Assembly (NCBI GenBank): GCA_047495785.1
Contig: JBLDXI010000042.1
Coordinates: 3,658,001 to 3,722,000 of the forward strand
Direction: 5' to 3'
DNA: 64,000 bases
DNA from: Lepidodermella squamata
Taxonomy: Eukaryota; Animalia; Gastrotricha
Part shown: positions 1 through 39,849 of the stretch, one piece after another
Numbering within the stretch: position 1 is the first letter of the stretch
How the letters are laid out: the number at the start of each line of letters is the position of its first letter
Made by a program: the position numbers and the translations under genes
Notes under the pieces: model-generated
Database searches by the model: none
Told to the model about the DNA's origin: nothing
Seen by the model: the letters and a program-made list of their open reading frames with translations, nothing else

Positions 1-748
1 GTCTAATTCTAACTTCGACGAATTTCCCCAATGTCGCCCGCCTTAGCCTTGACCTACAAGTGCCCTTCATCATGGCGAACCGTTTCAATCAGGACGGACT
101 GGAGCAGCTGTTCTGCCAGTTTCGGCAATGTGGCGGCGGCAAAACTAACCCGTCCGTGTTCGACATTTTCGTATATGCGGCAAAGCGGTTGATTGCCAGC
201 CCAGTTTTCGGCATTCCCGGCGGATCGAATGTTCGCGTGAAAAAACACATCGGTGGAATTCGGTTTAATACTACGATGCGCAAGTTGAAGAAAGAGATGA
301 TTGGCAAAATTAACGCCGCGAAAGTGTTGAAAGTGGGTCTACCAGCCGATCTTGGTCGCAACCCGTTATCTCTGTCCTACATGCTGGTTTTATCACTCGC
401 CGCCTCGGTCTAAGCAGCGACTCTGCAAATATCGAGTGGGCCGAGTGGGTCGCGCAGTGTAGCCGCGGCGGTCTTGTTCACACTCACTACCGCGTCAAGA
501 CTATTTTGACGGCGATTTGCCATCCCGACAATGCGGGTCATCTACTCGACGACGATTTGCTGCTCTTTGACGGATCGCGCGTTCGAGGCGTATCGCAATA
601 CGCCCGTGTGTTGTTTTCGTCGCGAGCAGTTCGATACAATCGCGATCACGAGGCGCTGCCGTTGCGAATGCGGCTCTACAACGCGACCTGTAGTTCGCCA
701 GGTTCTTCGACTACAGCCACTGGCAAGAGGCGTGGCAAGAAGCAGTAG
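1..748 (+). pseudogene. C-terminal fragment of a P-element/THAP9-like DNA transposase, frameshifted
   Basis: RFNQDGLEQLFCQFRQCGGGKTNP resembles the P-element/THAP9 motif QDxLExFFxxxRxxGGxNxNP. After SLSY (~381) a frame change gives AGFITRRLG...W..QCSRGGL, matching the YIAGY and SRGGL motifs, and continues into ORF 506-748. The 5' part lies outside the window. Confidence 0.75.
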
Positions 749-6569: not shown

Positions 6570-7133
6570 TTCTCGTGTTGCCAGTTCTAGAGATTCTAGG
6601 TTCACTCGGGATATTCTTTCACGCTGTCAGTCGGACTAATCTTTCGCAGCTTTCGGGACCGTACGTCCTGCTACTCTAATAGCACATAAAACCTGATAGC
6701 CCCAATTACATTTTGTCTTACTACCTATAAATCACGCAGCAACTGGCGTGTCTGGCCGTAACGGAAGCGAGCGAGAAAATGTGCAGCTACTAATAACTAT
6801 CGTCGTCGTCAACAGCAATGAAAAATTGATTTCGCAGATGTGGAATTTAAGGAAACTAATTTTACTCCATCTAGAAACTCGGTGAATTTTCAAAAAGAAT
6901 CTAACATTATGTTTACATTACTTCCGAAAGTTCCGCGCATAAATCGCGATGAATTTTTAGCTTATTTACAACATTTCAGACTTTCATGAAATTTGATTAA
7001 AAAATGAGTAAAAATTTTAAAATCTTAAAATCATTTGTATTTTTTCATTCATTCCTTCATTTCATTCACCGATTCAGCTTAAAGTTTCTACTCTTATTAC
7101 CAGCTGTAACGCGCTACACGTGTGCTCGAAAAG

Positions 7134-7404: not shown

Positions 7405-8631
7405 TTATACATTGTAATATTTCCTGAAGTTAATGTATCGCTCGTTGAATAGTTCATCAGTATTATTCGGCGCAATTTCCAAGCCAGCAGTCGATAACAT
7501 TTCTGAAACCGGAAGCTTCCGCTCCTTGTAAAACGCCGTCGGGCTCAAATTATCAGTCAACAGGTTGTATCTAACCGACCGCATTATCTCAGCTTTGTGC
7601 AGCCCACTTTCACTCGAGCATGACCCAACCGTGAAATTTGTCGCCGAACAAATGTAGTCGTAAAGCACAAAGGGCGTGATCTTTGTCCCAACATGCCCAG
7701 CATTTTTCATCACGCCAATTTTCGGCCTCGAAAGCGCCATAACCTCGCCGTCGTCAGTCATCCTACCCTTCGTGTACCTAGGATGTCTAGCCTCGGCATT
7801 GTCCCGAACATGCCAGCTATACTCGTCACGGTGGTGTTGGAACAGGTAATACGCAAGCAGATCAAACTGGCTGTAATGCATGTGAAATTTCGAGCAAATC
7901 ACGTGGAAAGCTTCCTCAAAGGTTGTTGTGTTGAAAAATTGCCGAACGTGCTCCCGAAACGGGGCGAAGTGCCGGCGTCGAACGATGAATGGAAATCCGA
8001 GGACAATCATATATTCACCGAATTTTTTCCCACCAGCGATGTTGTTGGCAGACTGTTGGTAGCCGTTACAACAGGCGTTGTAGCCGATAATTCTTGGCTT
8101 GCCATTTTCGAACAAATCTTCCGGGATGACCTTTGTCGCGAAAAATGAGTCTGCATCGGCGATTCCGATGAATTCCGACTCCGTGTATTGATCGCAGAAG
8201 AAGTTGGAATACATTTGCCTCGAGTAGCCCTTGCTCCGCCATTTCGAGCATAAAGTTCCAGCTCTAGGCTCTTTTTCGAATTTAACGATAGGATAAGGCG
8301 GTAGTAATGACAGTGTAGTGGCAACAGCGTGATCACTGGTTGACTCCTCGTCGAAAATTAGCATTAGCTTCGAGTTTTTCCATAATTCCCAGGGCCAAAA
8401 GAGCAGGTAGGATGGAGCGAAAATTTGCCAGTATTCAGCTGCTGATCCAGAGTACATCCTGACGACCAGCGTAAAATCTTGGGAATTTCGCCAAGGATCG
8501 TGGATTTCATTGAACAGCAGGCTATCAAAATTAGTTTGCGGTGCGGAGCGGAGTTTGAATAGTATCAAACCGGCGAAAGAGCAGATACAAAATAATAGCA
8601 TCCCCTTCTCGAAGGACTTGAGGGATGTCAT
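7405..8631 (-). CDS. GT-A-fold glycosyltransferase-like type II membrane protein, copy 1 (408 aa, intronless)
   Basis: N-terminal TM; GYSRQMYSNFFCDQYTESEFIGIADADSFF with DxD after a hydrophobic strand; FPF and YSQFDLL motifs; two tandem paralogues. Confidence 0.75.
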   Translation of the reverse strand: MTSLKSFEKGMLLFCICSFAGLILFKLRSAPQTNFDSLLFNEIHDPWRNSQDFTLVVRMYSGSAAEYWQIFAPSYLLFWPWELWKNSKLMLIFDEESTSDHAVATTLSLLPPYPIVKFEKEPRAGTLCSKWRSKGYSRQMYSNFFCDQYTESEFIGIADADSFFATKVIPEDLFENGKPRIIGYNACCNGYQQSANNIAGGKKFGEYMIVLGFPFIVRRRHFAPFREHVRQFFNTTTFEEAFHVICSKFHMHYSQFDLLAYYLFQHHRDEYSWHVRDNAEARHPRYTKGRMTDDGEVMALSRPKIGVMKNAGHVGTKITPFVLYDYICSATNFTVGSCSSESGLHKAEIMRSVRYNLLTDNLSPTAFYKERKLPVSEMLSTAGLEIAPNNTDELFNERYINFRKYYNV

Positions 8632-9282: not shown

Positions 9283-10521
9283 TCACCAGTGCCAAGATCC
9301 AACATATTTCATCATATCATTATTCCGCTTCTGCAACAACTCTCTCGCATTACTTGGCACTTTTTCCTCAGACTTGTGAAACATTGCAGAGTCCGGAAAG
9401 CTCCGCTCTTGCCAAAACGCTGTAGGAACTAGATGATCAGTCAATAGATTCCGCTCAACAGACTCCGAAATAGGTCTGCGGTAGTTCTCATGCTCTTTTC
9501 GACACGATCCATACGTGAAATTCGTCTCCCAACACACGTAATCGTACAGAATAAACGGCGTTGCTTCGTGGCCTGTATGCCCAGCATGTTTCATCAGGCC
9601 GATTTTCTGTACCTTGCTAAAAGCCAAAACCTCAGCATTTTTCGTCATTCGACCTCGATTTAAATGAGGATGACCTGCTTCGTCATTATCGCGAATGTGC
9701 CAGCTGTACTCATCGCGGTGATTCAGAAACAAATAATACGCAAGTAGGTCAAATTGGCTGTAGCCATTGTAGGTCGAGCAGATTTTATGGAAAGCCTCTT
9801 CGAAATTCGTCGTATTCATTGAGGTTGTCAGGAAATCGCGGAACATTCTGAAGTGCTTTCGACGGACGATAAATGGGAACCCCTGGACAACCATAAATTC
9901 ACCCAATCGTCGCCCTTTTGATACATACTTTACCGCAGACATTTGCCAACCAGAACAGCAGGCGTTGTAGCCAACAATTCGCGGCTTTCCATTTTCGAAC
10001 AAGTGCTCCGGGATGACTTTCACAGCGAAAAATGAGTCGGTATCGGCGATGCCGATGAATTCCGAATCCGAGTATTGATCGCAGAAGAAGTTGGAGTATA
10101 TTTGCCTCGAGTAGCCCTTGCTCCGCCATTTCGCGCATAAAGTTCCAGCTCTAGGCACTTTTTCGAACTTGATGATTGGATAAGGCGGTAGTAATGACAG
10201 TGTCGTTGCAACAGCGTGGTCACTGCTGGACTCTTCGTCAAAAATTAGCATTAGTTTCGAATTTTTCCATGATTTCCATGGCCAAAATAGCAGGTAGGAT
10301 GGAGCGAAGACTTGCCAGTATTCAACTGCTGATCCAGAGTACATCCTGACGACTAGCGTAAAATCTTGGGAATTTCGCCAAGGATCTTGGCTTCCATTGG
10401 ATAACAGGCTTTGAAGAGCAGTAATTGATGGGGCGGGGCGGAGATTGAACAAGTATAAACCGGCGGCAAAACAGATAAAAAATAGTAACACAAATTCCTT
10501 GGAGGACTTGGAAGAAGTCAT
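9283..10521 (-). CDS. GT-A-fold glycosyltransferase-like protein, copy 2 (412 aa); chimera of copies 1 and 3
   Basis: Same motifs (IADTDSFF). N-half closely matches copy 1 and C-half closely matches copy 3. Confidence 0.75.
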   Translation of the reverse strand: MTSSKSSKEFVLLFFICFAAGLYLFNLRPAPSITALQSLLSNGSQDPWRNSQDFTLVVRMYSGSAVEYWQVFAPSYLLFWPWKSWKNSKLMLIFDEESSSDHAVATTLSLLPPYPIIKFEKVPRAGTLCAKWRSKGYSRQIYSNFFCDQYSDSEFIGIADTDSFFAVKVIPEHLFENGKPRIVGYNACCSGWQMSAVKYVSKGRRLGEFMVVQGFPFIVRRKHFRMFRDFLTTSMNTTNFEEAFHKICSTYNGYSQFDLLAYYLFLNHRDEYSWHIRDNDEAGHPHLNRGRMTKNAEVLAFSKVQKIGLMKHAGHTGHEATPFILYDYVCWETNFTYGSCRKEHENYRRPISESVERNLLTDHLVPTAFWQERSFPDSAMFHKSEEKVPSNARELLQKRNNDMMKYVGSWHW

Positions 10522-11281: not shown

Positions 11282-12508
11282 TCACCAATGCCAAGATCCA
11301 ACATATTTAATCATTACATCAGTCCGTTTCCGCAACAAGTCTTTCGCATTGCTAGGCACTTTTTCCTCAGATTTGCGCAGCATTGCAGATTCCGGAAAGT
11401 TCCGCTCTTGCCAAAAAGCCGTCGGAACTAGAAAATCAGTCAACAAATTTCGCTCAACAGACTTGGCAATGGGTTGCCGGTATTTCTCAGGCTCCCTTCG
11501 ACACGATCCAAACGTGAAATTCGTCTCCCAACACACGTAATCGTACAGAATAAATGGCGTTGCTTCGTGACCTTTGTGGCCAGCATGTTTCATCAGGCCA
11601 ATTTTCTGTACCTTACTAAGCGCCAATATCTCAGCATTTTTCGTCATTCGACTTCGATTTAAATGGGGATGACCTGCTTCATCATTATCACGAATGTGCC
11701 AACTGTACTCATCGCGGTGATTCAGAAACAAATAATACGCAAGTAGGTCAAATTGGCTGTAGACAATGTAGGTCGAGCAGATTTTATGGAAAGCCTCTTC
11801 GAAATTCGTCGCATTCATCGTAGTTGTCAGGAAATCACGGAACATGCTGAAGTGCTTTCGTCGGACGATGAATGGGAACCCCTGGACAACCATGAATTCA
11901 CCCAATCGGCGGCCTTTCGACACATACTTTACCGCTGCCATTTGCCAACCAGCACAGCAGGCGTTGTAGCCAACAATTCGCGGCTTGCCGTTTTCGAATA
12001 AATGCTCCGGTATGACTTTCACGGCGAAAAATGAGTCGGTATCGGCGATTCCGATGAATTCTGACTCCGTGTATTGATCGCAGAAGAAGTTGGAGTACAT
12101 TTGCCGGCAATAGCCTACCCTATTGTGAGTTCGGCATAACGTTCCTTTCGGCGGGAATTTCTCGAATTTGACGATCGGATAGGGCGGGAGTTGCTCGAAA
12201 ACTGTAGAAACCGCATGGTCGCTATAGACCTCGTCGTCGAAGATAAGCATTAACTTCGAATTTTTCCAATGTTTCACCGGCCAGAACAACATGTAAGAAG
12301 GCGCGAAGACTTGCCAGTATTCGGCTGCTGAACCCGAGTACATGCGGATAATCAGAGTGAAGTCCGGGACAGTTAGCCATGGATTGGAGTGTTGGACTCT
12401 GAGCCCGTCATAATAATTCCAAACTCGACTGCGATTGAAATATAGGACGATGACACAGCAAATTGCAACAAGTAAAATGAATTTTCTCAATATCGTCAAT
12501 GTTAGCAT
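11282..12508 (-). CDS. GT-A-fold glycosyltransferase-like protein, copy 3 (408 aa)
   Basis: Same motifs (GYCRQMYSNFFCDQY...IADTDSFF) and N-terminal TM. Confidence 0.75.
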   Translation of the reverse strand: MLTLTILRKFILLVAICCVIVLYFNRSRVWNYYDGLRVQHSNPWLTVPDFTLIIRMYSGSAAEYWQVFAPSYMLFWPVKHWKNSKLMLIFDDEVYSDHAVSTVFEQLPPYPIVKFEKFPPKGTLCRTHNRVGYCRQMYSNFFCDQYTESEFIGIADTDSFFAVKVIPEHLFENGKPRIVGYNACCAGWQMAAVKYVSKGRRLGEFMVVQGFPFIVRRKHFSMFRDFLTTTMNATNFEEAFHKICSTYIVYSQFDLLAYYLFLNHRDEYSWHIRDNDEAGHPHLNRSRMTKNAEILALSKVQKIGLMKHAGHKGHEATPFILYDYVCWETNFTFGSCRREPEKYRQPIAKSVERNLLTDFLVPTAFWQERNFPESAMLRKSEEKVPSNAKDLLRKRTDVMIKYVGSWHW

Positions 12509-13306: not shown

Positions 13307-16193
13307 ATGTTTAAAGTTATCTTAACTGTTTCAATTCTCGCATCGAAACTATGCGAGGGGGTTCGCCTTTCGATGAAATCCCCGATGCCGGTTTTAGTAA
13401 CCGCAGCAGCGAATCTCACTAAGCCGCAAATTCGTCTTCTTGCTTCAGTCAGATACGGTTTGTCCTAATGTGAAATCAATGGTCTAATTTCGGCTTCCAA
13501 TTTGTTTATAGGCGGAAACGTTCAACCTGTCGGACCTCTAAGCACTGAAGCAACTCGAATAGCCCTGGAGAATGTTGAAAAACTTGGCATTCTGAAGAAC
13601 TACGATTTGGCCGTTGAGTTTATTGACAATCAGGTTAACATTTTCCTATTAACTAAGTGTATTACTCACGCAAACCTTCTAGTGCGTCCGTCAAGTTGGA
13701 ATCAACCAATTCTTAAATGCAATGCAACTTAATGGCGAAGCTCAAAACCGGGTTCCACTTTTCATTGGCCTGAAATGCGCAGATCAAAGAGATATCGCGG
13801 TCATAGCCGACCATTTCTCCTTTGTTGGGGTGAGCCAACTCACTTGACCTAACAACGCTACTTCAACTTCTCATCTATAGATGACCTCAGTGACCACGTA
13901 CCCGGCAATGTATCGGGACCGAAGCATGTTTCGATCTTACTACATCATGTCGCCATCACCTGAAATTTTCTACGCAGCTGTTCCGCCGTTTCTGAAAGCT
14001 ATGGGTTGGAATAGGGTGCACTTGTTGTCGGAAACTTCACCGGTTATGGATTTACTAGACGCGATTCTGCTGAAGAATCTTATCAGCCTTATCATAACCC
14101 TCACTGGGACAACGAAAAACTTCTACACCACTGGATCGACCCCGTCGTCCGAAAGTACTGAATCAGCTGTACTTGAGTTGGTAGCGGCTGGGAGACCGAG
14201 AATTGTCATCATGAGTGTTCAATTCGGTAGTCAACTAGCTTGTTGGCTGCATCGCTACGGCATGTACGGCCCAGCATACGTCTTTTTCATTTTCCCGTAC
14301 GCTAAATTTCTCTCAGACGCTCCTTTCCGATATCAATGGTGCACCGATCGCATGCTTTTCGATGTCCTGCAAAGCGTGATAAATTTCAACCATGAAGCTG
14401 TAGTGAATGGGGCTTCGAGGCTCTCTGATTCCCTCGGAGTTACTTCTCAATCAATCAATGAAAGTTTGATTGAGAAGATAGACCCGAATGATAACAGTGT
14501 GTACTACGGATGCTGCAGGAACTACATGTATGAGCAAGTTATCGGAGCTGCTCTAGCCCTGAATTCTACAGAAGCAGCTCTGAACAAGAACAATCAGACG
14601 CTTCTAGACTGGGTTACATCTGCGCAGAATTTCCAGCATAATGGTTCATTTATCCAATCACTGATAAGGAAGAGTTTGGAGGATTTAGTTTACTCTGGCT
14701 TCACATTAGACCTGAACAAGTCGATCAACGGATTGGTCGGGGCTACAGCTTTCGCCCAGGTTCAAATCGTCAGTAAGCCAGACGCGAAATTGACGAAAAA
14801 TCTGAATTCATACCTCCGAGAAAGTGTTGTAGCATCTTACGACAACCGTGGCTCGAAAACAGAGTTGAAATTAATGAAAACTCAGTTTGTATGGCAAACC
14901 TACGACGGCCAACCACCTCCAGATTCCACAATAGTCCTTCCGATGAAAATTGCGTTGATTCCGTTAACGGCACAGATAATTCTCATGACCCTGGCTAGTT
15001 TGCTGCTATTTGCCAATATAGCATGTTATTTGATAGGCTGGCGGCTGATCAAGCCTAGCCTCTCATCCATTCCTTCTTCATTTCTCAAGATTCATCAAAT
15101 AGGTTGCGGATTGATGATGATTGGAGTTCTTGTTACTCCATTCGGAGGCCATCATCAAGCCGGTATCTTTTGCATGTCGCGGTCATTCCTACTTCTTTCA
15201 GGATTCGCTCTGTTGAAAAGCGCTATTCTAGGGAAACTTATAACCATCCAATCTTTATCAGCTGGAAGCGATAGAACTAGGTTCACTCAAAGACTGCCGA
15301 CTCTAAGTCAAATGCCTGTAACTATTAAAACAGTCAAAACACGGAAAGCGCCGATTAGAAAGTTCCTCGTTCCAGCTATTATAGCTTTTGTTGCGATTTT
15401 GGTAACAATCATGATCATCTGGTTCTCAATTTCCCCGATCAAATCTCGGCGTATTGATTACGCGATTGATACATCAGCTTTCAGCTTGAGCTTAGCTTAC
15501 CAACCGTATACTTATGCTTGCTTCCTAGGAGATGCTGACATTTTTATCGGACTGATTTCAGCTCTGTTCATTGCGCCAATCATTGCACTAGCTTACCTGG
15601 CATTTGCACTCAACAAGGTATGCCATAATTTCGGAACAAACTCAGAAAGCATTTGTCCATAACTACGTACTGCGTTGATATTTTGAAGTTCGACTGAAGA
15701 CTTATACTGCCATTTAAGAGTGGCCTTAAGGATTAACATGAGAACAGACGACTTAAGAGTTACGAATTAGGAATGATGAGGCTTACGGAAGAAGTGGAAT
15801 ACTTACGAGTATGGTAAGCTCATGACTCATGGGGCAATAAGGATATCAGGGAACTTCGAATTATCAGCGAAGAATAAGGGTTCGGGTATCATGGGAACTT
15901 ATCCTTTCATAAGATGATTTGAATTTCAGTCTTTCCATTATTGCTTATTGCCCTCAATTCTCTAGACTGTTGTTGACGAGGTTCCAGAGTTAACTGCAGT
16001 TCGATCAGCTGCATACAGCACAATCCTGATACTTCTGGCTGGAACAGGTGTTATTGCAGCTTTTTTCAATTCTGAACCCGGAACCCTGGAGATTGCGATC
16101 AATATTTTGGCCTTACTGCTGGCTGGAACTTCAACCGGAACTATGGTCATCCCTAAGTTGTTCAAGTTACTCTTCGTAAGCACTGCCGCATAA
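13307..16193 (+). CDS. Class C GPCR, GABA-B-receptor-like, 5 exons (13307-13457, 13512-13633, 13683-13829, 13881-15617, 15966-16193)
   Basis: All junctions are GT-AG and keep frame: signal MFKVILTVSILASKLCEG; GILKNYDLAVEFIDNQ|C; YPAMYRDRSMFRSYY; MGWNRV; GQPPPDST; TM3 ..KSAILGK; last exon supplies TM6-7 ending VIPKLF. Confidence 0.85.
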
Positions 16194-17025: not shown

Positions 17026-20000
17026 TTACAAAACTTCCTCCTCAGTGTTCGCTTTTGTCAGAACAGCTGTTTTGATCTCGTTAAATTGCGGCGGTCTTAA
17101 ATCAGTCGGAATTTTCAATTTATTCGCCATGCTGTTATTCGGCAGCCGACTCGGGCCGAATAACGACGTAGTTTGCTGTTGACTGCCGCCATTTGCCTGA
17201 TTCTGGTTGTTGTTGTTGTTGTTGTTGTTGCTGTTTTGCATTGGCGGCATGCGGAAACTTCGCGGCCGAATACCAGCGGCCCCCATGACCATGGTGAGGC
17301 TTTTGAAGGCCGAAGCTAGGCGCTCGCGGTCTTTCGCCTCGAGTTCCTCGCGGCGGATGCGGTTTTCTAGTATCGCGTAGCACAGCACGGATAGCAGGAG
17401 GTTGACAACCAGTACCAACACTTTGAGCCCGAGACCGGCGACAAACGACAACAGACACGATGTGGCGATGCCGAGCGATTGCAGAATTCGAAAGTTCGAA
17501 AACGCCAATTGATGCTCAGAGCCGGCGACTTTGGTTATTAAAACTAAAAAAATATAAAAAAAGCCTTTTAATAAAACAAAATTTGACTGAAGTTGAACTA
17601 AATTTCAAAAAACACCTCAAAAATTAACACTAAAAATAGGAATAAGTGCCATTTTCCGGATAATTTGTTGAACCATACGTGTTGGCCGGGTTCTTGAGAA
17701 GTTCGAAAGGTCGTTCATAAAAATATTTGCTGGGTAATAAATTTCTGAATTTTTGAACTTGTTCGAATGCTCTTAATTGGACTGATTAGGCAAACATTCG
17801 AAATTTGGGCCAAAAACCGGCATACCTATCTCCAAATTAACCTCCAATAGTCAGTAAGATTGAATTGATTTAAAGCGAATCCTGATTTCAAAAACATTCG
17901 TGAAAAGATATTTTAAAAATATCTTAATTTGTTCGCTCATTGAAAACTTATTGCCTGAATTTTTCGCTTTCTTAGGTCGAAATATTTCCACCAAAACAAC
18001 TCAAGTTCCAGGTACCAGCTTCCTTATAGGTTCCTCGGCTACTTATGTGGAAAAATCACATCGATTTTGGTTTCCAAGGCTGATTCAGGAAATTCAATGC
18101 TGGAACCCTAACTTATTTGCAAATTCAACTATTTTCAGAAAATTAAATTGCAAAAGGGGTGAAATCGAACAATTGAAACAATATGAAATTTCCAAATATT
18201 TGCTGATTTTCAAACATTAAATCGCAGTTTATGACTCTTTTTCCTGTTTTAATTCCAAGAAAATTACCGTAGCAGCTAGTTTGCCAAACGGCATCGCAGA
18301 AGCCGTAAATGACAGGTATGATGAAAATAAGGATAGGTATGGACGGGTACGCTTGCCATTGGTACAAGAAGGCGGCCAGCGCCAAATGTACAATGGCAGT
18401 TATGCTGATGACGATTTCACGGCTGACAGATCGTTTGGCGGCGAATGACGCGGCTGCGGAGAACACGCACGACATGACGCCAGCAACCATGACGGCTACG
18501 CCGACTGAACTCAGGCCGAACATGCACGATAAATAAATCTACGGGATATTTTGAAAATTAATATTAAACAAATTGAAATTTTGCAATACCTTTGTGTAAT
18601 CAGTGTACAAAAATCCTTGTTCAAGGCCGTTGAAGAAAAGCAGCGGGATGAGTAGTCGAAAATGGGGTCCATCGAACAATTGAAAGAGATGTGCGACGAC
18701 GAACTGAAATTTGATTAAAAAAGCTTCATTGCCCAGAAATAGTGAAAAATAAACTAACCTTTTGAAGCCGCATTGATAGATTGAATTCCAGAGGGTCTGT
18801 TTCCTCTTCTTCATCGTCCAAGCCCGAGTGATCCTTCTGATCTTCGTGAGGGTGGAAGAAAAGAGCCGCTAGGACGAGAGCGATGAAGCCAAGCGCAATT
18901 AGCCACGCAACTGAGAATAAAATCAGAAATATAAGGTATAGGAATCAAAGGGAATAAATTCCTTCCATTTGTACAAAAATAGCCCATACCAACTATGAAC
19001 TTCATATCAAAGTTCGAACCTTCGTAACAAGATCTCAATTTTGCATTAACAACATGCATAATTTTCTATTTTATTTCTCAGGCCATCCCAAAACATGGCC
19101 TATATAAAGGATATTATTGCTTGGAATCTTTAGACCAGCTTTGAAAAAATAAGGCCTTTCTTCCTATTTTGAAATTACTTTTTAAGGGCCATTATATTTG
19201 TACTTAAACGGCTTTCCGGTCACGTAAATTTGTCGCTCATAGTATTCAGCATTTAAAACTGAGTAAGAATCCTATCTCATCTAAAAATTTGAGACACTTG
19301 GCTAAAACATGAAATTAGGGTTAGAAAGCTCAGGAAACCTAAAAGGTCCCGAACCTTAGATCGAACTTCATGAAATTAGGGAAAGACTCCTTATTTTGTC
19401 TGCAAATTTGATAAGGCAGATTCGATATCGAATCCAAGTTCCAAGTATCGATTTTACAAATCAGCGATTTTTCCGATATCAGAAGCCTAAGACTCCAACA
19501 TATAGCTAATATTGAAAACCTAGCGTAATATGCGGGGCACCAATATCGATCAAAAAAATGAAAATTTTTAATCGCAAAGTATCGGGAAAATTCTTGCTGG
19601 AACCTGGAACCTAAATTTCAATTAATAGTGCAAATATTTAGAGGTAAAATAAAAATGATAATAATAAATATTGTATTTTTTACCTGCCCATGTAGCCGGC
19701 AATGGAACTAGGTCAAACGCTGAAAAACTGCTGATATTCGCCCAGGCGCGATACGAAGGCAGCGTGTCGACGCTGTCGCGGCAATGCGCCCACAAATCGT
19801 CGTATTGACTCGCCAGATTCGGCATCAAATCGACATCGAAGAGGGGCGGGAAGAAGTACCAACCCGGCCCTAAGGTCATATTATACTCGTAGGTCCTATT
19901 CGTCGCCGGGACGATTCTAACCGTTCGAGTCGACGACGGCTGATCGTCGCCAGTTTCCGATAGCAAAATCGCGGCTACGCTCAAATTGCCCCAGATATGG

Positions 20001-26107: not shown

Positions 26108-26626
26108 ATGGTCATAAAAAGTGTTGCTTTATTATTCGTTGTCGTCGCTTTGTGCGTGACCTGGAAAGAGGCTTCTTGTGACCTAATTCCTCTTATTTCA
26201 GCCGTCGATATTGCAGACAAAGCCGGGAGTCAAATAACGTAAGCTTTAATGCCTATTATTATCGGCTGTTTTTCATCACAAAATTTCGTACCTCAGGAGT
26301 TGCATGAAGAGTATCTGCTTCAAATCTGGCAACACTCAGACCGAAATGTTCGCAAGGTGCATGGATTCTTGCGCCTGTCACTCGTGAGTTTTTGCTCCAG
26401 TTTGAATGAAAAAAAATCATAATTTGAAAAATCACAAGATATTGCCGATATATGGAGCAAGTGAATTCATGGGCTTTTCGAGATTGCTTTCCAAAAATCT
26501 GCCTCAAAAGTGAGTGATGAATTTGAATAAACAGCTTCGGATATTACAATTTTTTTTATTAATTTTTAAGGAAACTTGTATCAAGAAGACCCTGACGTAT
26601 GGTGGGCTCTACTTGATCTCCAATGA
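26108..26626 (+). CDS. Secreted 8-Cys peptide family, paralogue A, 114 aa (exons 26108-26238, 26297-26383, 26439-26509, 26571-26626)
   Basis: MVIKSVALLFVVVALCVTWKEASCDLIPLISAVDIADKAGSQITSCMKSICFKSGNTQTEMFARCMDSCACHSYCRYMEQVNSWAFRDCFPKICLKRNLYQEDPDVWWALLDLQ. Canonical splice sites; homologous to B-D. Confidence 0.85.
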
Positions 26627-27334
26627 GTGATATAGCAATTAAAAATGACTCGAGATGATAAGCAAAACAAGAACATCGACTGGCAAAATCAGCGCGCACA
26701 CACTTCACTTCGCTGAGAATTTTCTCAGTTCAACACGCCGTTGTCCCTGGACAATTTTATACATCAGTTTCTATGTTTGTATTTGTTCGCCAGCATTTTT
26801 CACTCTCTATGATTGTCCCTACTGTACTGGTTTTCTTTATAACTTAATATAAGCCTCTTCTGGCCAAATAAAATGAAACTTATCTTTGATTTTTACGCAT
26901 TTTTTCTACTTATTTATTTGGGAGAGAAAATGTCGAAGATCAATGTCGAAAAAATCCGTGCAATATTCACAGAGTCAATATTATGAGTAATATTTGTTAT
27001 ATATACCCTAATAATTAAAAAAGCGTGTTAAAAAATTGCGATAAAAATTTACACACACCCACCCACCTACGCTTCGAATTCTTACCCACGTTGACTCGGT
27101 GTCGGGTTATTCGAACTTACACTACGAATGATTATTACTGTCCGATATCGCAATTTTTGGAAATTTTCAGGTTCGACGTAAAAATGCATTTCGTTGTAGT
27201 TAAGCTCGCACTGGATTTCCGCCGTTGGGCATTCTTTAGAGCTCATCGGACTTGTGGTCGCTGGTCAGCCAGCCACAATATCATATTTTCATTGAAAAAT
27301 TGTCCTAAATAGATAACACTTTAATTCATCATTG

Positions 27335-27821
27335 ATGCGATTTTTGCAATTTTGTCTCATTTTTGCGCTTTTTCCTCTCGCGACCTGCCACAAAAGAATA
27401 AGAGGATCAGAATATCTCAGGTAATTTTAGAGTTTCGGGCTGAAAATTTAAATTAATTGACTTCCTTATACAGCAAATGCGTACATAGCGTTTGCAGTTT
27501 GGCTAAGGATAGCAAATCCGAAATGTTTAAACGTTGCATGGACAGCTGCATTTGCCATTCGTAATTTTCGTAATTAATTAAAATTTCTTACTATAATTTC
27601 GAATATTTCAGCTATTGCAATCATGTCGACTCAGAAGCTGACTGGGACTTTAGAGATTGCTTCCCGGTTTGCACTGAAGGTAAAATTGAATTATTCTGAT
27701 TTTTTCTGGTTTTATGTGTTTTTTTTGCGTTTTAGGCAGGCCGTATGAGCAAGATCCAGACTATTGGTGGCGAAACCTGGAAGCACCGAAAAACGTCGCA
27801 ATAGAACATCGCCTAGCATGA
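27335..27821 (+). CDS. Secreted 8-Cys peptide family, paralogue B, 108 aa (exons 27335-27420, 27474-27560, 27612-27679, 27736-27821)
   Basis: MRFLQFCLIFALFPLATCHKRIRGSEYLSKCVHSVCSLAKDSKSEMFKRCMDSCICHSYCNHVDSEADWDFRDCFPVCTEGRPYEQDPDYWWRNLEAPKNVAIEHRLA; AATAAA at ~27886. Confidence 0.85.
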
Positions 27822-28117
27822 ACGCGCAATTCTACAAAAAATACTCATCGTTTTTTATCTCTAATCTGTTGACATATCTGGGCCAAATAAATTACCACTT
27901 TTTTCTAAATTTATGATAATTTGATAAAAAAATAACAAGGCCATTTTTTCGGTGACCATTGCCGATTCCTCGAGAGAAGGCGTTCTAATGGCTTTGTTTT
28001 GCGAAGATGACTCATGAATCAACTCTCAAGGGAATTGCGCCAGTAGACAGAAGAGATGCTAATGTCATGAGTGATAGCTCAATTTCTTGTTCCGTTTTTT
28101 TTCATAACTTTCTGGAA

Positions 28118-28935
28118 ATGTTACACCATTTTTTCTTTCTGATTGCGATTTTTACCTTCGCCAATTCAGCAACAGTTATCAAGTCCCAGGATATTTCAAA
28201 AGCTTCGTTACCTCTAATTAAGTAAGCAAGTTCATTTTAGTTGTGTTCGAAACAAATTTTTGCACAATTTAACAGTCGATGCTTGGATAGCATATGCTTG
28301 GTGGCGAAAAATCCCAAACCGGACATGTTTTCAAAATGCGTCGATTCTTGCATTTGCCATTCGTAATTTGAAAATTCCAGCTTAAAAATATAATTAATTT
28401 CCTAATATATTTCAGCTATTGTCGAACTGTTAGCAAAAGAAATGAGTACGATTTCGGAATTTGCTTACCAGCTTGTTTAAAGGGTAAAACTTGATGAGTC
28501 CTTCTGCTCGTACATAGTTTTATGGTGATTTTCTTCTTGACGTCATCCACCAGTTATTTTTTCTGATGAAAATTTACAGGCAGATGCAGGGGAATGATTC
28601 ATCGTAATTGTAGGTCAAATATCTTTTTCTCAACCTTTACCGATGGGAAGGCCCGAAGAGTGATTTTCGTTTTGCTGTCCGACTGTACAAAATCGAAACT
28701 TCAAGGATGATTCTTTCAGGGAAGGTCAGCTATTTGCCTGCAAAAAATTGACCAATTGGGCGGAAAATGACAAATATGACCGATTTAACATAAAACTATG
28801 TACCAGCAGGCACTCCAAAAATTAATTTGAAAATAATACTTTTTTATTATTTCCACATCAGGAGCACCTTACGAGAAAGACAGGTCATACTGGAACAGTC
28901 AGTTGGTGATTTCGAAGTATCTAACCTTTGGATAA
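28118..28935 (+). CDS. Secreted 8-Cys peptide family, paralogue C, 110 aa (exons 28118-28221, 28276-28362, 28416-28483, 28862-28935)
   Basis: MLHHFFFLIAIFTFANSATVIKSQDISKASLPLINRCLDSICLVAKNPKPDMFSKCVDSCICHSYCRTVSKRNEYDFGICLPACLKGAPYEKDRSYWNSQLVISKYLTFG. Last exon chosen by homology (GxPYExD..YW). Confidence 0.8.
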
Positions 28936-29338
28936 TAAACAATAAACACAATTATTGCAACAATAATATTCGGGAAAGGAAGAGTCGAATAATTATTTAT
29001 TATTCTCATACGATTTTTTGTTAATAAAACATTCAGATATAGGTATTACTATTTTTTTGATATTTTATTTAGCAGACAATGCATTTTTGCTTGGGAGGAT
29101 AAATTAGAACTAAATGCCCACGGCATCAATGGTCCAAAATCGATGATCATAGTGTAAAAAAATTCGCACTTTACGACGGCGGCGGACACGCGCAGAATAT
29201 ATACGAACCGGGTCCCACGTGACAAGATTCCGCTAAAGTAGATTCCTCGTATCTTAAGAAATAGCCATGCGGTATTTCATTCGGATTGCTGATGGTGACG
29301 TTTGTTTTCATTTTTTATTAGGAGTTTATAGGTACCTA

Positions 29339-29502
29339 CAGGGTAGCCGATAAAATTCCGCAGAAGGAAAATTCGATGTGTATCAATTTAATGAGGAGTT
29401 TTAAGAAGTTGAAGAATTTCAAGCATTATTTTGTCAATGGAAACTCCGCATTAAATTGATGCGCATCGAATTCGCCTTATGCGGAATTTTTTTGCCACCC
29501 TG
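29339..29502. mobile_element. Tc1/mariner-type MITE, copy 2, with TA target-site duplication
   Basis: TA-CAGGGTAGCC...GCCACCCTG-TA; reverse-complement homologue of 3793-3959. Confidence 0.8.
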
Positions 29503-30561
29503 TAAACTTTTCAGGAGATGAATTAGGTCACAAATTTAGTTCCTTATTGTGAGGTCAAACTCAAAGCTTGAGATTTATTATTCAATGAATAATTATTAAA
29601 AATTAAATTGCCAATCAGTTGAAAGCGCAGCCGGTATTTTTTCAAGCAAGACTTTTTATTTAATACAAGAGTGGGCGCTTTCTATTAATGATAATTCCGA
29701 TTATTTTAGAGTCAATATTTTTATTAAGCGATTCATTTTTTTTATGATGATGAATTTAGTCTCGGCAAACATTTGATCCGAAAAGCCACCCAACGATAAG
29801 CCTATTTATTTCTGGCGTTCGTTTTTCGTTGCCAAAGGACAATAATTCATTCACAGCTGATTTCATCTATAGAATTTCAAGTCTGAAATGAGAGATAAAA
29901 GCTATATCTCTCACCGAATCGCACTGACTTCGTTTCCAAGGCGCTCATAATACCAATGACGCAGAGTTGTCTACAACTTCCTACGCTAAAAGCTATTTGC
30001 TCAAACTTGTGAGCAGTTAACAATTCAGGATATTGTTTTTTTTACACTGAAATTGCAATATTTTACTCATCCTCCTCAACCTTCGCATAGATGAAATGAG
30101 AATATTAGCAGGAAGTGGGGTAGGCTGAGTTTGTTGGCAACCGTTCGAGGGAATGTTTTCATTTTTCCATGAGGTTTAGATTTCACTTCTAGGCACCCAG
30201 ACCGCGTTCGAGCTCCCAAATCATTTCCTTTGCATTTTCATTATATAAGCATATCTATGAGGTTTTTTGATAATTTATAGTAAAGTTGTATTTAGAAATT
30301 GAGATAAAAAAATCGGGACAGTTTAGGGATTTTTTTTCCGGCTCGCCCACCTGTGGCAATATTGGTATTTGAAATAATTAGACCTCCTTGTGCTTGTCTC
30401 GCTTTCCGTCTATAGAGACAATCGAATTGCCGGCGGCTTGGGATTTCGCGCTATTTAATCCATATTACTTTAGCAAAATAACTAATGGCAAATATTGTCG
30501 CTCACTAGTCCTGATTTGCTACTCTGATTAGTCCTAATTTTCATTTCATTTCAAGAAAAAC

Positions 30562-31041
30562 ATGGGCAATTTTTATAAATTTGCTGCGATTTTCGGACTC
30601 GTCGCTTTGGCTCAAGCGATGCCTCGGCAAATGAGCGATACGGAAGTTTCTGCTGCCGATTACACCAAGTAACGAGAAAACGGGTCAAATAATATAATTT
30701 TATCTCATTTTCTATTACAGGTCATGCATTCAGGACGTGTGTGCAATGGCGAAAGATCGAACTTCGGAAATTTTCACTCGCTGCATGGATGGCTGTATTT
30801 GCCGATCGTAAGAAAAATCCGCCTTTTAGTTCGAATTTGCCTATAAAACCCCTATTTTTTTAGGTATTGTAAGGGCGTCGAGGCTGAGGAAGAGTGGACT
30901 TTCAATGAATGTTTCCCTGTTTGCACAGATGGTAAAAATAAGCTATTACTCCTTTTTGTCAAATTTTCGTTGATTTTTCAAGGTCATCCTTACGAGCAGG
31001 ACCCGAAATTCTGGCAGAGCTATCTACCCTCAAACGAATAG
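30562..31041 (+). CDS. Secreted 8-Cys peptide family, paralogue D, 106 aa (exons 30562-30668, 30721-30807, 30864-30931, 30983-31041)
   Basis: MGNFYKFAAIFGLVALAQAMPRQMSDTEVSAADYTKSCIQDVCAMAKDRTSEIFTRCMDGCICRSYCKGVEAEEEWTFNECFPVCTDGHPYEQDPKFWQSYLPSNE; same intron phases as A-C. Confidence 0.85.
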
Positions 31042-38268: not shown

Positions 38269-39849
38269 GGGTCCACATCTTTTCATCGGAACATTAAATA
38301 CTTTTATCGTGCCACTTTCATCTTAAACCATCGGAAATGCATTATTTCATGAAAAGCTATCTTAAACCGTCGGAATATGAAAGAAGCATTATCTATCGGA
38401 ACACGCGAATTATTTCATCGGAACACGCGAATTATTTCATCGGAACACGTGTTATTTTTCCACCTTAAAAATTGAAAACCGTATTGGAATCATTCCTCGA
38501 TTTTTAACCGAGTAGCTTTTTCAATTATGGAGTTTCTCCAACAGTTTTATGCATCTGACGATGAGGCTGTTTTGATGAACAAGAAGACCATTATGAAGAA
38601 ATTTCCCGTGATGAGCCTACTTACGACGAAGATGACGACCCTGACATCGTGCCAGACGACCAGGACTTTGTTGTACAAGAGAAGCCATTCGAGTTCGACA
38701 CCTTCGAAACTCTGCCACCTGGTTGGCCCTTCGAAAAGGTCCAAGACAGATGATGTGATCGATCACTGGGTCTTTGACTCGTCTAAAAACGAGTTTGCTA
38801 TCACTCCGGCTATTTCTGACCGACTTCACAAAGAGGCCTATCAGCTGCATACGAAGTTCAGCTCCTGCTACGAGAAAATCTCCGACTTTTCGTGGCTTTC
38901 GGTGAAGCCTGGCTGGCGTGTCGACGACTCAGTTACCTTGGCAAGGGCGTCGGGTAATTGGGCAAGTTTGGCGCAGTTCGAGTGCTCTCTTGATTTCTGT
39001 TGCTTGACCACCAGCAACGGCGCCACAATCACCTGTACATGTCGGGTAGGGTCAAAAAAGATTCCCTGCATTCACGCCATCGCCTTGGGTCATGAGTTGG
39101 AGCTGAAGCTGATTCCTGACAATCTTCAGTCGATACCTCTTGTTCTGAGAGGTAACCCGGGTCGACCCCCTCGACATGGTCCAGCTCTTGCTTTAGCCGA
39201 GCCAGTTGATCAAGCAGGCGGTGTTAACCGTGGCCGTGGCTCTTCTAGTCGTGGGCGGGGTGGCCGCTCTGGAGCTCGTTGTACCGGGCGTGGTCGGGGT
39301 CGAGGTGCCTCAGTTGCTGCTGCTCAGTTGACACCAGCTCCAAGCCGTGGAGGCCGGGGTAAAGGTGGCCGTGGTGCTGTTGTAGCTCCTGTTCAGCCGG
39401 CTTCGGGTGTTGCTGTAGCCCGTGGTGGCCGCGGACGTGGCTTAGCTGTGGCTCCCGTTCAAGAACCAGCTACTCGTGGCAAGCGGGGTAGGGGCGGTGC
39501 TGCTATTGCTCGAGTTCAGTCGGAGGAACCTGCTTCTTCTCAATCTAATGAACCGGCCACTGTTGTAGCTAGTATTGAGCCGAGGCGTGGCCGCAGTCGC
39601 GGACTTGTGGCTACATCTATTTCGGTTGACGAATCCTCAAGTCGTCGAGGCCGTGGCAACAGCCGCAACGTAGAATAACGTATCACTGTGTTTCCGATGA
39701 GAAAATGTGTTTTTCCGATGAATAAATGTGTTATTCCGATGAATTAATTGGTTTCAATGGGTAAAATAAATATTCCGATGGTTCCGATGGTTTAAGACAA
39801 AACTAGCACGATAAAAGTATTTAATGTTCCGATGATTTGATATTACTTC
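38269..39849 (+). mobile_element. Non-autonomous Mutator-like (MULE) element, 1581 bp, 8-bp TSD CCGTGGTT, carrying ORF 38527-39678
   Basis: CCGTGGTT at 38261-38268 and 39850-39857; TIR core TCATCGGAACATTAAATACTTTTATCGTGC placed 14 nt inside each end; subterminal CATCGGAA repeats. The ORF has a SWIM finger CTCRVGSKKIPCIH, PGRP and an RGG-rich tail, but no DDE core. Confidence 0.85.

What the first reader, a model, noticed from the sequence alone, without database searches (positions are those of the whole stretch)
26108..31041. Hidden tandem family of four secreted 8-cysteine peptides with a doubled helical-hairpin-like scaffold
Seen: four genes whose Cys-bearing exons are absent from the ORF track because exons are only 56-131 nt. 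All share four coding exons, intron phases 2/2/1, an 87-nt exon 2 and a 68-nt exon 3 (71 in A). Each has a signal peptide, the spacing C-x4-C-x13-C-x3-C-x-C-x3-C-x13-C-x3/4-C and a conserved tail (P/L)Y(E/Q)xDxxxW. The core is an internal repeat of C-x3/4-C-x13-C-x3/4-C with Phe three residues before the third Cys (EMFKRC / WDFRDC). Known: twin CX3C motifs staple helix-loop-helix folds in plant alpha-hairpinins and Tim9/10. Inference: a disulfide-stapled double hairpin. Loop charge differs strongly between paralogues (VEAEEEW in D versus VSKRNEY in C), as expected for diversifying toxins, antimicrobial peptides or pheromones. I do not recognise the family.
Basis: partly seen in the sequence, partly recalled or inferred. 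Interest (0 to 1): 0.85.

Follow-up and report, generated by a model that had tools for sequence, protein, structure and literature searches.

The report
Four tandem secreted eight-cysteine peptide genes
Four neighbouring small genes, each split into four tiny exons, encode secreted mini-proteins with the same eight-cysteine framework; no relatives turned up in any database I could search, so this looks like a lineage-restricted orphan peptide family of unknown role.

Summary
Four + strand gene models (A 26108-26626, B 27335-27821, C 28118-28935, D 30562-31041) each have four exons, GT..AG at all 12 introns and phases 2/2/1. Exon 2 is 87 nt and exon 3 is 68 nt (71 nt in A). All share the core C-x4-C-x13-C-x3-C-x-C-x3-C-x13-C-x3/4-C and the tail (P/L)Y(E/Q)xDxxxW. 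They are under protein-level constraint: pN is 0.23-0.42 against saturated pS, codon-position identity is 0.57/0.71/0.38, and exons are 44% GC against 26% for introns. All four have hydrophobic N-termini. Exon-by-exon searches (Pfam, PDB, 1.84 billion protein representatives, three DNA collections) found no relative. A leave-one-out test shows that annotated kin as diverged as the paralogues would have been detected. AlphaFold on the exon-2 alignment gives helix-loop-helix (pLDDT 79.5), which supports the first hairpin. The "doubled" repeat is only weakly supported (hhalign P=0.011), and the fold may instead be three helices around one long central helix. Diversifying selection cannot be tested because dS is saturated. 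Searches and folds of the joined proteins were left out because joined letters have no reference. My verdict is a real orphan family of secreted, disulfide-stapled helical peptides of unknown function, most plausibly extracellular ligands.

The parts
26108..26238 (+). Gene A exon 1 (ATG, hydrophobic N-terminus, pro-region; 131 nt)
   Evidence: model; max 10-residue hydropathy 3.53
26297..26383 (+). Gene A exon 2 (87 nt; Cys1-Cys5)
26439..26509 (+). Gene A exon 3 (71 nt; Cys6-Cys8, one extra codon before Cys8)
26571..26626 (+). Gene A exon 4 (56 nt; LYQEDPDVW tail, stop TGA)
26867..26872 (+). AATAAA 241 nt after the stop of A, inside the motif GGCCAAATAAA shared with gene B (an ATTAAA also lies at 26638-26643)
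   Evidence: D1
27335..27420 (+). Gene B exon 1 (86 nt)
27474..27560 (+). Gene B exon 2 (87 nt; Cys1-Cys5)
27612..27679 (+). Gene B exon 3 (68 nt; Cys6-Cys8)
27736..27821 (+). Gene B exon 4 (86 nt; PYEQDPDYW tail, stop)
27886..27891 (+). AATAAA 65 nt after the stop of B (in GGCCAAATAAA)
   Evidence: D1
28118..28221 (+). Gene C exon 1 (104 nt)
28276..28362 (+). Gene C exon 2 (87 nt; Cys1-Cys5)
28416..28483 (+). Gene C exon 3 (68 nt; Cys6-Cys8)
28504..28809 (.). Insert of ~306 bp with 21-nt terminal inverted repeats inside intron 3 of gene C; it explains the 378-nt intron (72 nt without it)
   Evidence: (I4)
28862..28935 (+). Gene C exon 4 (74 nt; PYEKDRSYW tail, stop); AATAAA follows at +6 and +88
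30562..30668 (+). Gene D exon 1 (107 nt)
   Evidence: signal-peptide coding similarity to gene A (D2)
30721..30807 (+). Gene D exon 2 (87 nt; Cys1-Cys5)
30864..30931 (+). Gene D exon 3 (68 nt; Cys6-Cys8)
30983..31041 (+). Gene D exon 4 (59 nt; PYEQDPKFW tail, stop)

Best explanation
This is a tandem array of four old paralogous protein-coding genes, all on the + strand and each with four exons. Each encodes a 106-114-residue precursor made of an N-terminal signal peptide, a variable pro- or spacer region of about 10-25 residues, a 53-54-residue eight-Cys core and a conserved acidic/aromatic tail, (P/L)Y(E/Q)xDxxxW. I infer that the product enters the secretory pathway, the eight core Cys form four disulfides, and these staple a small all-helical domain. 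Helix 1 carries C1 and C2. A long second helix carries C3 and C4 and probably also C5 and C6. A last segment carries C7 and C8. The scaffold and tail are conserved while the two 13-residue loops and the termini vary. My preferred reading is therefore a family of extracellular binding ligands (signal, recognition or pheromone-like peptides). Each would have a shared docking or processing surface in the tail and a paralogue-specific surface in the loops. Shown: gene structure, coding constraint, hydrophobic N-termini, the Cys framework, a predicted helix-loop-helix for the first half, and absence of detectable relatives. Inferred: secretion, disulfide pairing, the fold of the second half, and the ligand role. 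Sub-confidences: real coding genes 0.9, secreted 0.75, disulfide-stapled helical fold 0.6, ligand role 0.35-0.4.
For: All four models share GT..AG introns, phases 2/2/1 and identical intron positions relative to the Cys framework. In six pairwise comparisons pN is 0.23-0.42 against pS 0.62-1.06. Identity at codon positions 1/2/3 is 0.57/0.71/0.38, and 17 of 63 core columns are invariant: the 8 Cys plus F, D, S, Y, F, P, Y, D and W. Exons are 44% GC and introns 26% GC. Hydrophobic N-terminal segments have 10-residue hydropathy of 2.7-3.5. AATAAA or ATTAAA follows genes A, B and C, and A and B share GGCCAAATAAA. AlphaFold2 on the exon-2 alignment gives helix 2-8, a loop and helix 17-29, with mean pLDDT 79.5. 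Net charges of 0, -4, +4 and -7 and an invariant Y..D...W tail fit partner binding better than membrane attack. No relative was found in Pfam, PDB, 1.84 billion representative proteins or three DNA collections. Leave-one-out power of the exon-2 profile is 41-54 bits, E 1e-9 to 1e-5.
Against: I had no transcript or protein evidence. No orthologue was found, so conservation rests on the four paralogues alone. Gene D has no canonical poly(A) signal within 400 nt. There is no shared upstream motif. The structure prediction covers only a 30-residue fragment with a 4-sequence alignment (pTM 0.40), and Foldseek found nothing at that size. The signal peptide was judged by hydropathy only, not with a trained predictor. 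Nothing tested here discriminates the ligand role from a defence, inhibitor or matrix role. The joined proteins were neither searched nor folded.
Confidence: 0.4

Rival explanations
1. The peptides are defence molecules, meaning antimicrobial peptides or toxins. They would be animal analogues of plant alpha-hairpinins or of Cys-stabilised alpha/alpha hairpin toxins. The stapled helices would give a stable scaffold and the variable loops would carry the activity.
For: They are small, secreted, Cys-rich and tandemly duplicated. Half 2 fits the alpha-hairpinin motif C-X3-C-X4-20-C-X3-C (PMC11591084). A weak Cys-driven match (E=0.23) exists to the 26-residue chain 2plx_B 'Peptide Inhibitor'. Loop charge differs between paralogues.
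Against: Net charge is 0, -4, +4 and -7, so the peptides are mostly not cationic. The paralogues are old and constrained, with pN well below pS and saturated dS, rather than recently and rapidly diversifying. The invariant acidic/aromatic tail is unlike known hairpin toxins or antimicrobial peptides. There is no significant sequence match.
Confidence: 0.25
2. The peptides are secreted protease inhibitors of the helical-hairpin type, and one of the inter-helix loops is the reactive loop.
For: The only PDB sequence with any resemblance to exon 2 is a 26-residue 'Peptide Inhibitor' chain (2plx_B, E=0.23). Loops with Lys/Arg occur in A, B and C.
Against: The match is not significant and is driven by Cys spacing. 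The loops of D are acidic, and no reactive-site motif is conserved across paralogues.
Confidence: 0.07
3. The peptides are structural or matrix components, for example of eggshell, cuticle, an adhesive or a secreted house, cross-linked through disulfides.
For: The neighbourhood is rich in lineage-specific secreted-looking families, such as three tandem 410-aa ORFs with hydrophobic N-termini. Precursor A has an odd ninth Cys outside the core that could form an intermolecular bond.
Against: The proteins are small and single-domain, with no repeats, no low-complexity or Gly/Pro/Tyr-rich regions, and an even, fully conserved 8-Cys core that suggests intramolecular bonds.
Confidence: 0.08
4. [quoted passage not shown]
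For: C-x3-C ... C-x3-C spacing with 13 residues between is in the range of small Tim proteins (established knowledge; PMC3848088 listed).
Against: All four have N-terminal hydrophobic segments typical of signal peptides, which small Tims lack. There are eight Cys rather than four. No Pfam match of any exon to any family at E<=10 is meaningful.
Confidence: 0.02
5. These are not functional genes. They would be chance open frames, or decayed copies that are no longer expressed.
For: I had no transcript evidence. No annotated protein of this kind exists in 1.84 billion representatives. D lacks a canonical poly(A) signal.
Against: There are four intact frames with identical exon architecture after divergence that saturated synonymous sites. 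pN is well below pS, the codon-position identity gradient is as expected for coding sequence, and exon and intron GC differ. Decay over that time span would have broken frames and splice sites.
Confidence: 0.04

Closest known systems
Plant alpha-hairpinins (for example the Veronica trypsin inhibitor type and EcAMP type; motif as defined in PMC11591084)
   Same: Both are small secreted peptides. The motif is C-X3-C-X4-20-C-X3-C in a helix-loop-helix stapled by two disulfides, and the Cys are almost the only conserved residues. Half 2 of B, C and D fits the motif exactly (X3, X13, X3). Half 1 is predicted to be helix-loop-helix.
   Different: That family is from plants, and its members are released from vicilin-type or multi-module precursors by proteolysis. 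Here two units are fused with a single residue between C4 and C5. Half 1 is C-X4-C, several non-Cys residues and a C-terminal tail are invariant, and there are eight Cys in one domain. There is no significant sequence similarity (best E=0.23).
Small Tim proteins (Tim9/Tim10 family, twin CX3C) of the mitochondrial intermembrane space
   Same: Both have twin C-x3-C motifs separated by a loop of similar length, stapling an antiparallel helical hairpin.
   Different: Small Tims have four Cys and no signal peptide, are imported through the Mia40 relay and form hexameric chaperones. Here there are N-terminal signal-like segments and eight Cys, and no Pfam match.
Cys-stabilised alpha/alpha hairpin toxins of animals (scorpion kappa-KTx type; from my own knowledge, not tested by name)
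   Same: Both are animal, secreted, two-disulfide helical hairpins with C-x3-C ... C-x3-C.
   Different: Those toxins are 20-30-residue single hairpins. No such chain was returned by the PDB sequence or fold searches.
Other 8-Cys helical secreted domains (fungal CFEM; plant nsLTP-type 8-Cys motif; from my own knowledge)
   Same: Both have eight Cys, four disulfides and a small helical extracellular domain, and CFEM also has a C-x-C in the middle.
   Different: The Cys spacings do not match, since there is no CC pair and the spacing after C-x-C is 3 rather than 9-14. No Pfam hit was found for any exon.

Membership tests
alpha-hairpinin | Cys motif C-X3-C-X4-20-C-X3-C (PMC11591084) | tested here: inconclusive
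   Half 2 (C5-C8) fits in B, C and D (3,13,3), while A has 3,13,4. Half 1 (C1-C4) is 4,13,3 in all four and fails the strict motif.
alpha-hairpinin | Helix-loop-helix fold | tested here: inconclusive
   AF2 on the exon-2 alignment gives helix 2-8 / loop / helix 17-29, pLDDT 79.5 and pTM 0.40, but for half 1 only. Half 2 was not foldable by reference.
alpha-hairpinin | Two disulfides C1-C4 and C2-C3 per hairpin | not testable with these tools
   This needs disulfide mapping or a solved structure.
alpha-hairpinin | Plant origin; vicilin-type or multi-module precursor processed into separate ~30-40-residue peptides | tested here: not met
   The genome context is animal-type (class C GPCR, UNC-93-like, TNP-like). 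The two halves are separated by one residue, with no inter-module linker.
alpha-hairpinin | Detectable sequence relationship to a solved member | tested here: not met
   The best match is 2plx_B 'Peptide Inhibitor' at E=0.23 and 14.7 bits, which is Cys-driven.
small Tim (zf-Tim10_DDP) | Match to the family profile | tested here: not met
   No Pfam family at E<=10 for exon 2 or exon 3 of any gene, apart from one chance hit (HPIP_like, E=0.028). Exon-wise queries have reduced power.
small Tim (zf-Tim10_DDP) | No cleavable signal peptide; four Cys only | tested here: not met
   Hydrophobic N-termini in all four; eight core Cys.
CFEM | Eight-Cys spacing of the CFEM consensus and a Pfam match | tested here: not met
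   The spacing 4,13,3,1,3,13,3 differs from my recollection of the consensus, and there is no Pfam hit.

The most novel reading that the evidence does not exclude
The eight-Cys core is a disulfide-rich fold not yet described in animals. In it, one long central helix is stapled on two faces by a flanking helix on each side, like a fused double alpha-hairpin. The four paralogues are peptide ligands (pheromone- or cytokine-like) of lineage-specific receptors, possibly the divergent class C GPCR-like genes that lie 10-22 kb upstream in the same window.
Probability: 0.1. Interest if true: 0.75.

Novelty: new variant of a known kind. Interest (0 to 1): 0.45.

Why it matters
Genes with exons of 56-131 nt escape ORF-based and many automated annotations, so families like this one are systematically missing from protein databases. 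If expression is confirmed, this would add an orphan family of secreted, disulfide-stapled helical mini-proteins from a poorly sampled animal-type lineage. It could also add a new way of fusing two Cys-stapled hairpins into one compact domain. That is of interest for peptide-fold catalogues and for understanding lineage-specific extracellular signalling or defence. It does not bear on a long-standing open question, and orphan Cys-rich secreted families are common in invertebrate genomes, so I rate the interest as moderate.

Tried and rejected
(1) I queried search for homologous proteins with the only by-reference frame long enough to admit ~110-aa targets. That frame is gene D exon 3 plus its stop-free 51-nt intron plus exon 4, 30847-31038, 64 aa. 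No candidate came back.

(2) The exhaustive profile search with exon 2 (A1) gave two hits, P0001 and P0002. Both are translated repeats matched in 5-12 short stretches, so I rejected them.

(3) The search for related loci with A1 in metagenome, prokaryote-genome and viral contigs confirmed nothing. With A2 it returned L003, a 58% GC bacterial-type contig whose match lacks the Cys framework and lies inside a 401-aa ORF, so I rejected it.

(4) Foldseek of the 30-residue model found no match, as the model is too short.

(5) Taxon placement did not succeed. The GPCR ORF had no homologue and the 441-aa ORF is not on record. The TLC exon's best relative is an unnamed ENA metagenome protein at 63% identity. 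There are no tRNA or Rfam matches. The organism stays unidentified. It is an animal-type eukaryote and not human-like (about 55-nt introns, no close protein matches).

(6) A search for a shared upstream motif found none (the control part of that script crashed through my own error and was not repeated).

(7) Global exon-versus-intron identity was uninformative in AT-rich sequence. I replaced it with codon-position and pN/pS tests.

(8) dN/dS proper could not be computed because dS is saturated in five of six pairs.

Slips: one search used a wrong frame and was corrected. To reach the 30-residue minimum, the first column of A1 is read from the intron's terminal AG plus the first exon base, so it is not the true residue in A, C and D.

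Left out: every search or fold of the joined (spliced) proteins in the public-database tools, because joined letters have no reference. The exons were joined only inside scripts to describe the splice models.


Full report
WHAT IS THERE

- Gene A: exons 26108-26238, 26297-26383, 26439-26509, 26571-26626 (114 aa).
- Gene B: exons 27335-27420, 27474-27560, 27612-27679, 27736-27821 (108 aa).
- Gene C: exons 28118-28221, 28276-28362, 28416-28483, 28862-28935 (110 aa).
- Gene D: exons 30562-30668, 30721-30807, 30864-30931, 30983-31041 (106 aa).

All 12 introns are GT..AG and the phases are 2/2/1 in every gene. Exon 2 is 87 nt in all four. Exon 3 is 68 nt, or 71 nt in A. Introns are 51-61 nt, with one exception. 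Intron 3 of C is 378 nt and contains a ~306-bp insert bounded by 21-nt inverted repeats (28504-28524 and 28789-28809, one mismatch). Without that insert the intron would be 72 nt.

The last eight Cys of each product are spaced 4,13,3,1,3,13,3, with a final spacing of 4 in A. A Phe lies three residues before the third Cys of each half. The tail (P/L)Y(E/Q)xDxxxW is present in all four.

Precursors A and B carry two further N-terminal Cys, at residues 16 and 24 in A and 7 and 18 in B. Those of B lie in the presumed signal peptide. Residue 24 of A may survive in the mature protein. No fifth copy exists in the window (tblastn; Cys-density scan).

ARE THEY GENES?

Several independent signatures say yes.
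- In the 62-63-codon core, pN is 0.23-0.42 while pS is 0.62-1.06. Synonymous sites are saturated and replacement sites are held back.
- Identity at codon positions 1/2/3 over the six pairs is 0.57/0.71/0.38, against 0.25 expected from composition. The gradient persists without the Cys codons.
- 17 of 63 core columns are invariant: the 8 Cys plus F, D, S, Y, F, P, Y, D and W.
- Exons are 44% GC and introns 26% GC.
- Only the coding frame of exon 2 is open with five Cys in all four genes.
- Each product begins with a strongly hydrophobic segment, with best 10-residue hydropathy of 2.7-3.5. The signal-peptide coding parts of A and D are still recognisably similar at the DNA level (D2).
- AATAAA or ATTAAA follows the stops of A, B and C. 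A and B share GGCCAAATAAA. D has no canonical signal within 400 nt.

No shared upstream motif was found. I had no transcript data, so expression remains unshown. Four frames and 24 splice sites that stay intact after divergence saturating synonymous sites are hard to reconcile with pseudogenes or chance.

CONTEXT AND SOURCE

The window has no tRNA or Rfam match. Its long ORFs include class C GPCR-like genes (ANF_receptor, 7tm_3), an UNC-93/MFS-like piece, a TNP-like (P-element/THAP9-type) fragment, a SWIM ORF and a TLC-domain exon. Together with ~55-nt spliceosomal introns and AATAAA signals, this indicates an animal-type genome.

It is not human-like. The GPCR ORF has no homologue at E<=1e-5. 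A 441-aa neighbour is not on record. The TLC exon's nearest protein is an unnamed metagenome product at 63% identity. The lineage is therefore poorly represented in public protein sets, and I could not name it.

RELATIVES

The joined proteins were neither searched nor folded in the database tools, because joined letters have no reference. That step is left out.

- Pfam on exons 2, 3 and 4 at E<=10 gave only one chance hit, HPIP_like at E=0.028.
- PDB sequence profiles of exon 2 (A1) and exon 3 (A2) gave nothing significant. The best small-peptide match was 2plx_B 'Peptide Inhibitor' (26 aa, E=0.23), a Cys-driven resemblance.
- Gene D has a stop-free 64-aa frame across exon 3, its 51-nt intron and exon 4, which admits targets of 35-112 aa. 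It found no candidate.
- The exhaustive HMMER search of 1.84 billion representatives with the exon-2 profile gave two hits, both translated tandem repeats.
- A leave-one-out test shows that a paralogue left out of the profile still scores 41-54 bits (E 1e-9 to 1e-5 at that database size). Any annotated relative as diverged as these paralogues would have been seen.
- DNA-level scans of metagenome, prokaryote-genome and viral contigs confirmed nothing. The single candidate, L003, is a GC-rich bacterial contig lacking the Cys framework.

The caveat is plain. Genes with such small exons are likely to be unannotated elsewhere too, and no eukaryotic genome collection was available for translated search.

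STRUCTURE

AlphaFold2 on the exon-2 alignment (30 residues, 4 sequences) predicts helix 2-8, a loop, and helix 17-29, with mean pLDDT 79.5 and pTM 0.40. This supports a helix-loop-helix for C1-C4. Foldseek finds nothing at this size.

The second helix runs to the end of the fragment and carries C3, C4 and C5 (i, i+4, i+6), and C6 follows at i+10. One long central helix stapled on two faces is therefore at least as likely as two separate hairpins. That part is inference.

The internal-repeat idea is weakly supported. hhalign aligns F-x2-C-x3-C of the two halves in register, with P=0.011 and probability 3.8%. Against a simple duplication, half 1 has C-x4-C where half 2 has C-x3-C, half 2 has an invariant Pro inside its last C-x3-C, and intron 2 cuts inside C5-x3-C6 rather than between the halves.

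HOW IT MOST LIKELY WORKS

The products most likely enter the secretory pathway, lose the signal peptide and possibly a short pro-region, and fold into a four-disulfide helical mini-domain. The scaffold and the acidic/aromatic tail are conserved. The two 13-residue loops and the termini vary, and loop 2 has net charge 0, -4, +1 and -4 in A-D.

Net charges of 0, -4, +4 and -7 argue against classical cationic antimicrobial peptides. Old, constrained paralogues argue against rapidly diversifying toxins, although saturation prevents a proper dN/dS test. I therefore prefer extracellular ligands with a common docking or processing surface and paralogue-specific loops, at about 0.35-0.4. Defence peptides come next at about 0.25, and inhibitor, matrix or other roles trail behind. 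None of these roles was tested.

COMPARISON WITH KNOWN KINDS

The family works like Cys-stapled helical hairpins. These include plant alpha-hairpinins (motif C-X3-C-X4-20-C-X3-C, helix-loop-helix, two disulfides; PMC11591084), small Tims, and animal alpha/alpha hairpin toxins.

Membership in any of these is not supported. The strict motif is met only by half 2. The precursor organisation and taxon differ. There is no significant sequence match, and signal-like N-termini exclude small Tims. I file it as a new variant of a known kind: a fused, eight-Cys version of the stapled helical hairpin, in an orphan family.

VERDICT

These are real-looking genes and the family is probably new, but the function is unknown and there is no expression evidence. 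Interest is moderate (0.45), because orphan secreted Cys-rich families are common in invertebrate genomes. The possible new fold and the hidden-by-small-exons aspect are the notable points.

No virus, toxin of concern or broken gene is involved.

Noticed in passing
window 28504-28809: A ~306-bp insert with 21-nt terminal inverted repeats (one mismatch) sits inside intron 3 of gene C. It looks MITE-like and is the only copy in the window.
   Followed up: partly
window 29352-29490: A near-perfect palindrome (50-nt arms, 88% complementary, 39-nt spacer) lies in the 1.6-kb spacer between genes C and D. It is single-copy in the window and its nature is unknown.
   Followed up: partly
window 7405-8631, 9283-10521, 11282-12508 (all - strand): Three tandem single-exon ORFs of ~410 aa are 59-78% identical to one another. 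Each has an N-terminal hydrophobic segment and 8-10 Cys. None has a Pfam or PDB sequence match, so this is a second orphan, secreted-looking family in the window.
   Followed up: partly
window 4239-6605 (-) and 13881-15662 (+): These are divergent class C GPCR-like single-exon ORFs: a weak ANF_receptor match with 7 TM-like segments, and a 7tm_3 match. The second found no homologue at E<=1e-5 among word-sharing candidates.
   Followed up: partly
window 3-410 (+) and 38527-39678 (+): Transposase-related pieces: a TNP-like RNase H C-terminal domain fragment at the window edge, and a 383-aa ORF with a SWIM zinc finger.
   Followed up: no
window 58145-58624 (+); loci L001, L002: This TLC-domain exon has its nearest protein (P0003, 63% identity, 265 aa) only in two ENA metagenome assemblies, where it lies next to ceramidase-like fragments. 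That indicates a thinly sampled lineage.
   Followed up: partly
window 30932-30982: Intron 3 of gene D is 51 nt, in frame and free of stops, so retaining it would keep the reading frame (64-aa open frame 30847-31038).
   Followed up: no
window 26862-26893 and 27881-27912: A shared GGCCAAATAAA motif lies 3' of genes A and B. It is probably a conserved poly(A) signal context left from the duplication.
   Followed up: no
window 17172-17261 (+ frame): A run of nine consecutive Cys codons (a simple trinucleotide repeat) overlaps ORFs on the opposite strand. It is probably a microsatellite rather than coding sequence.
   Followed up: no
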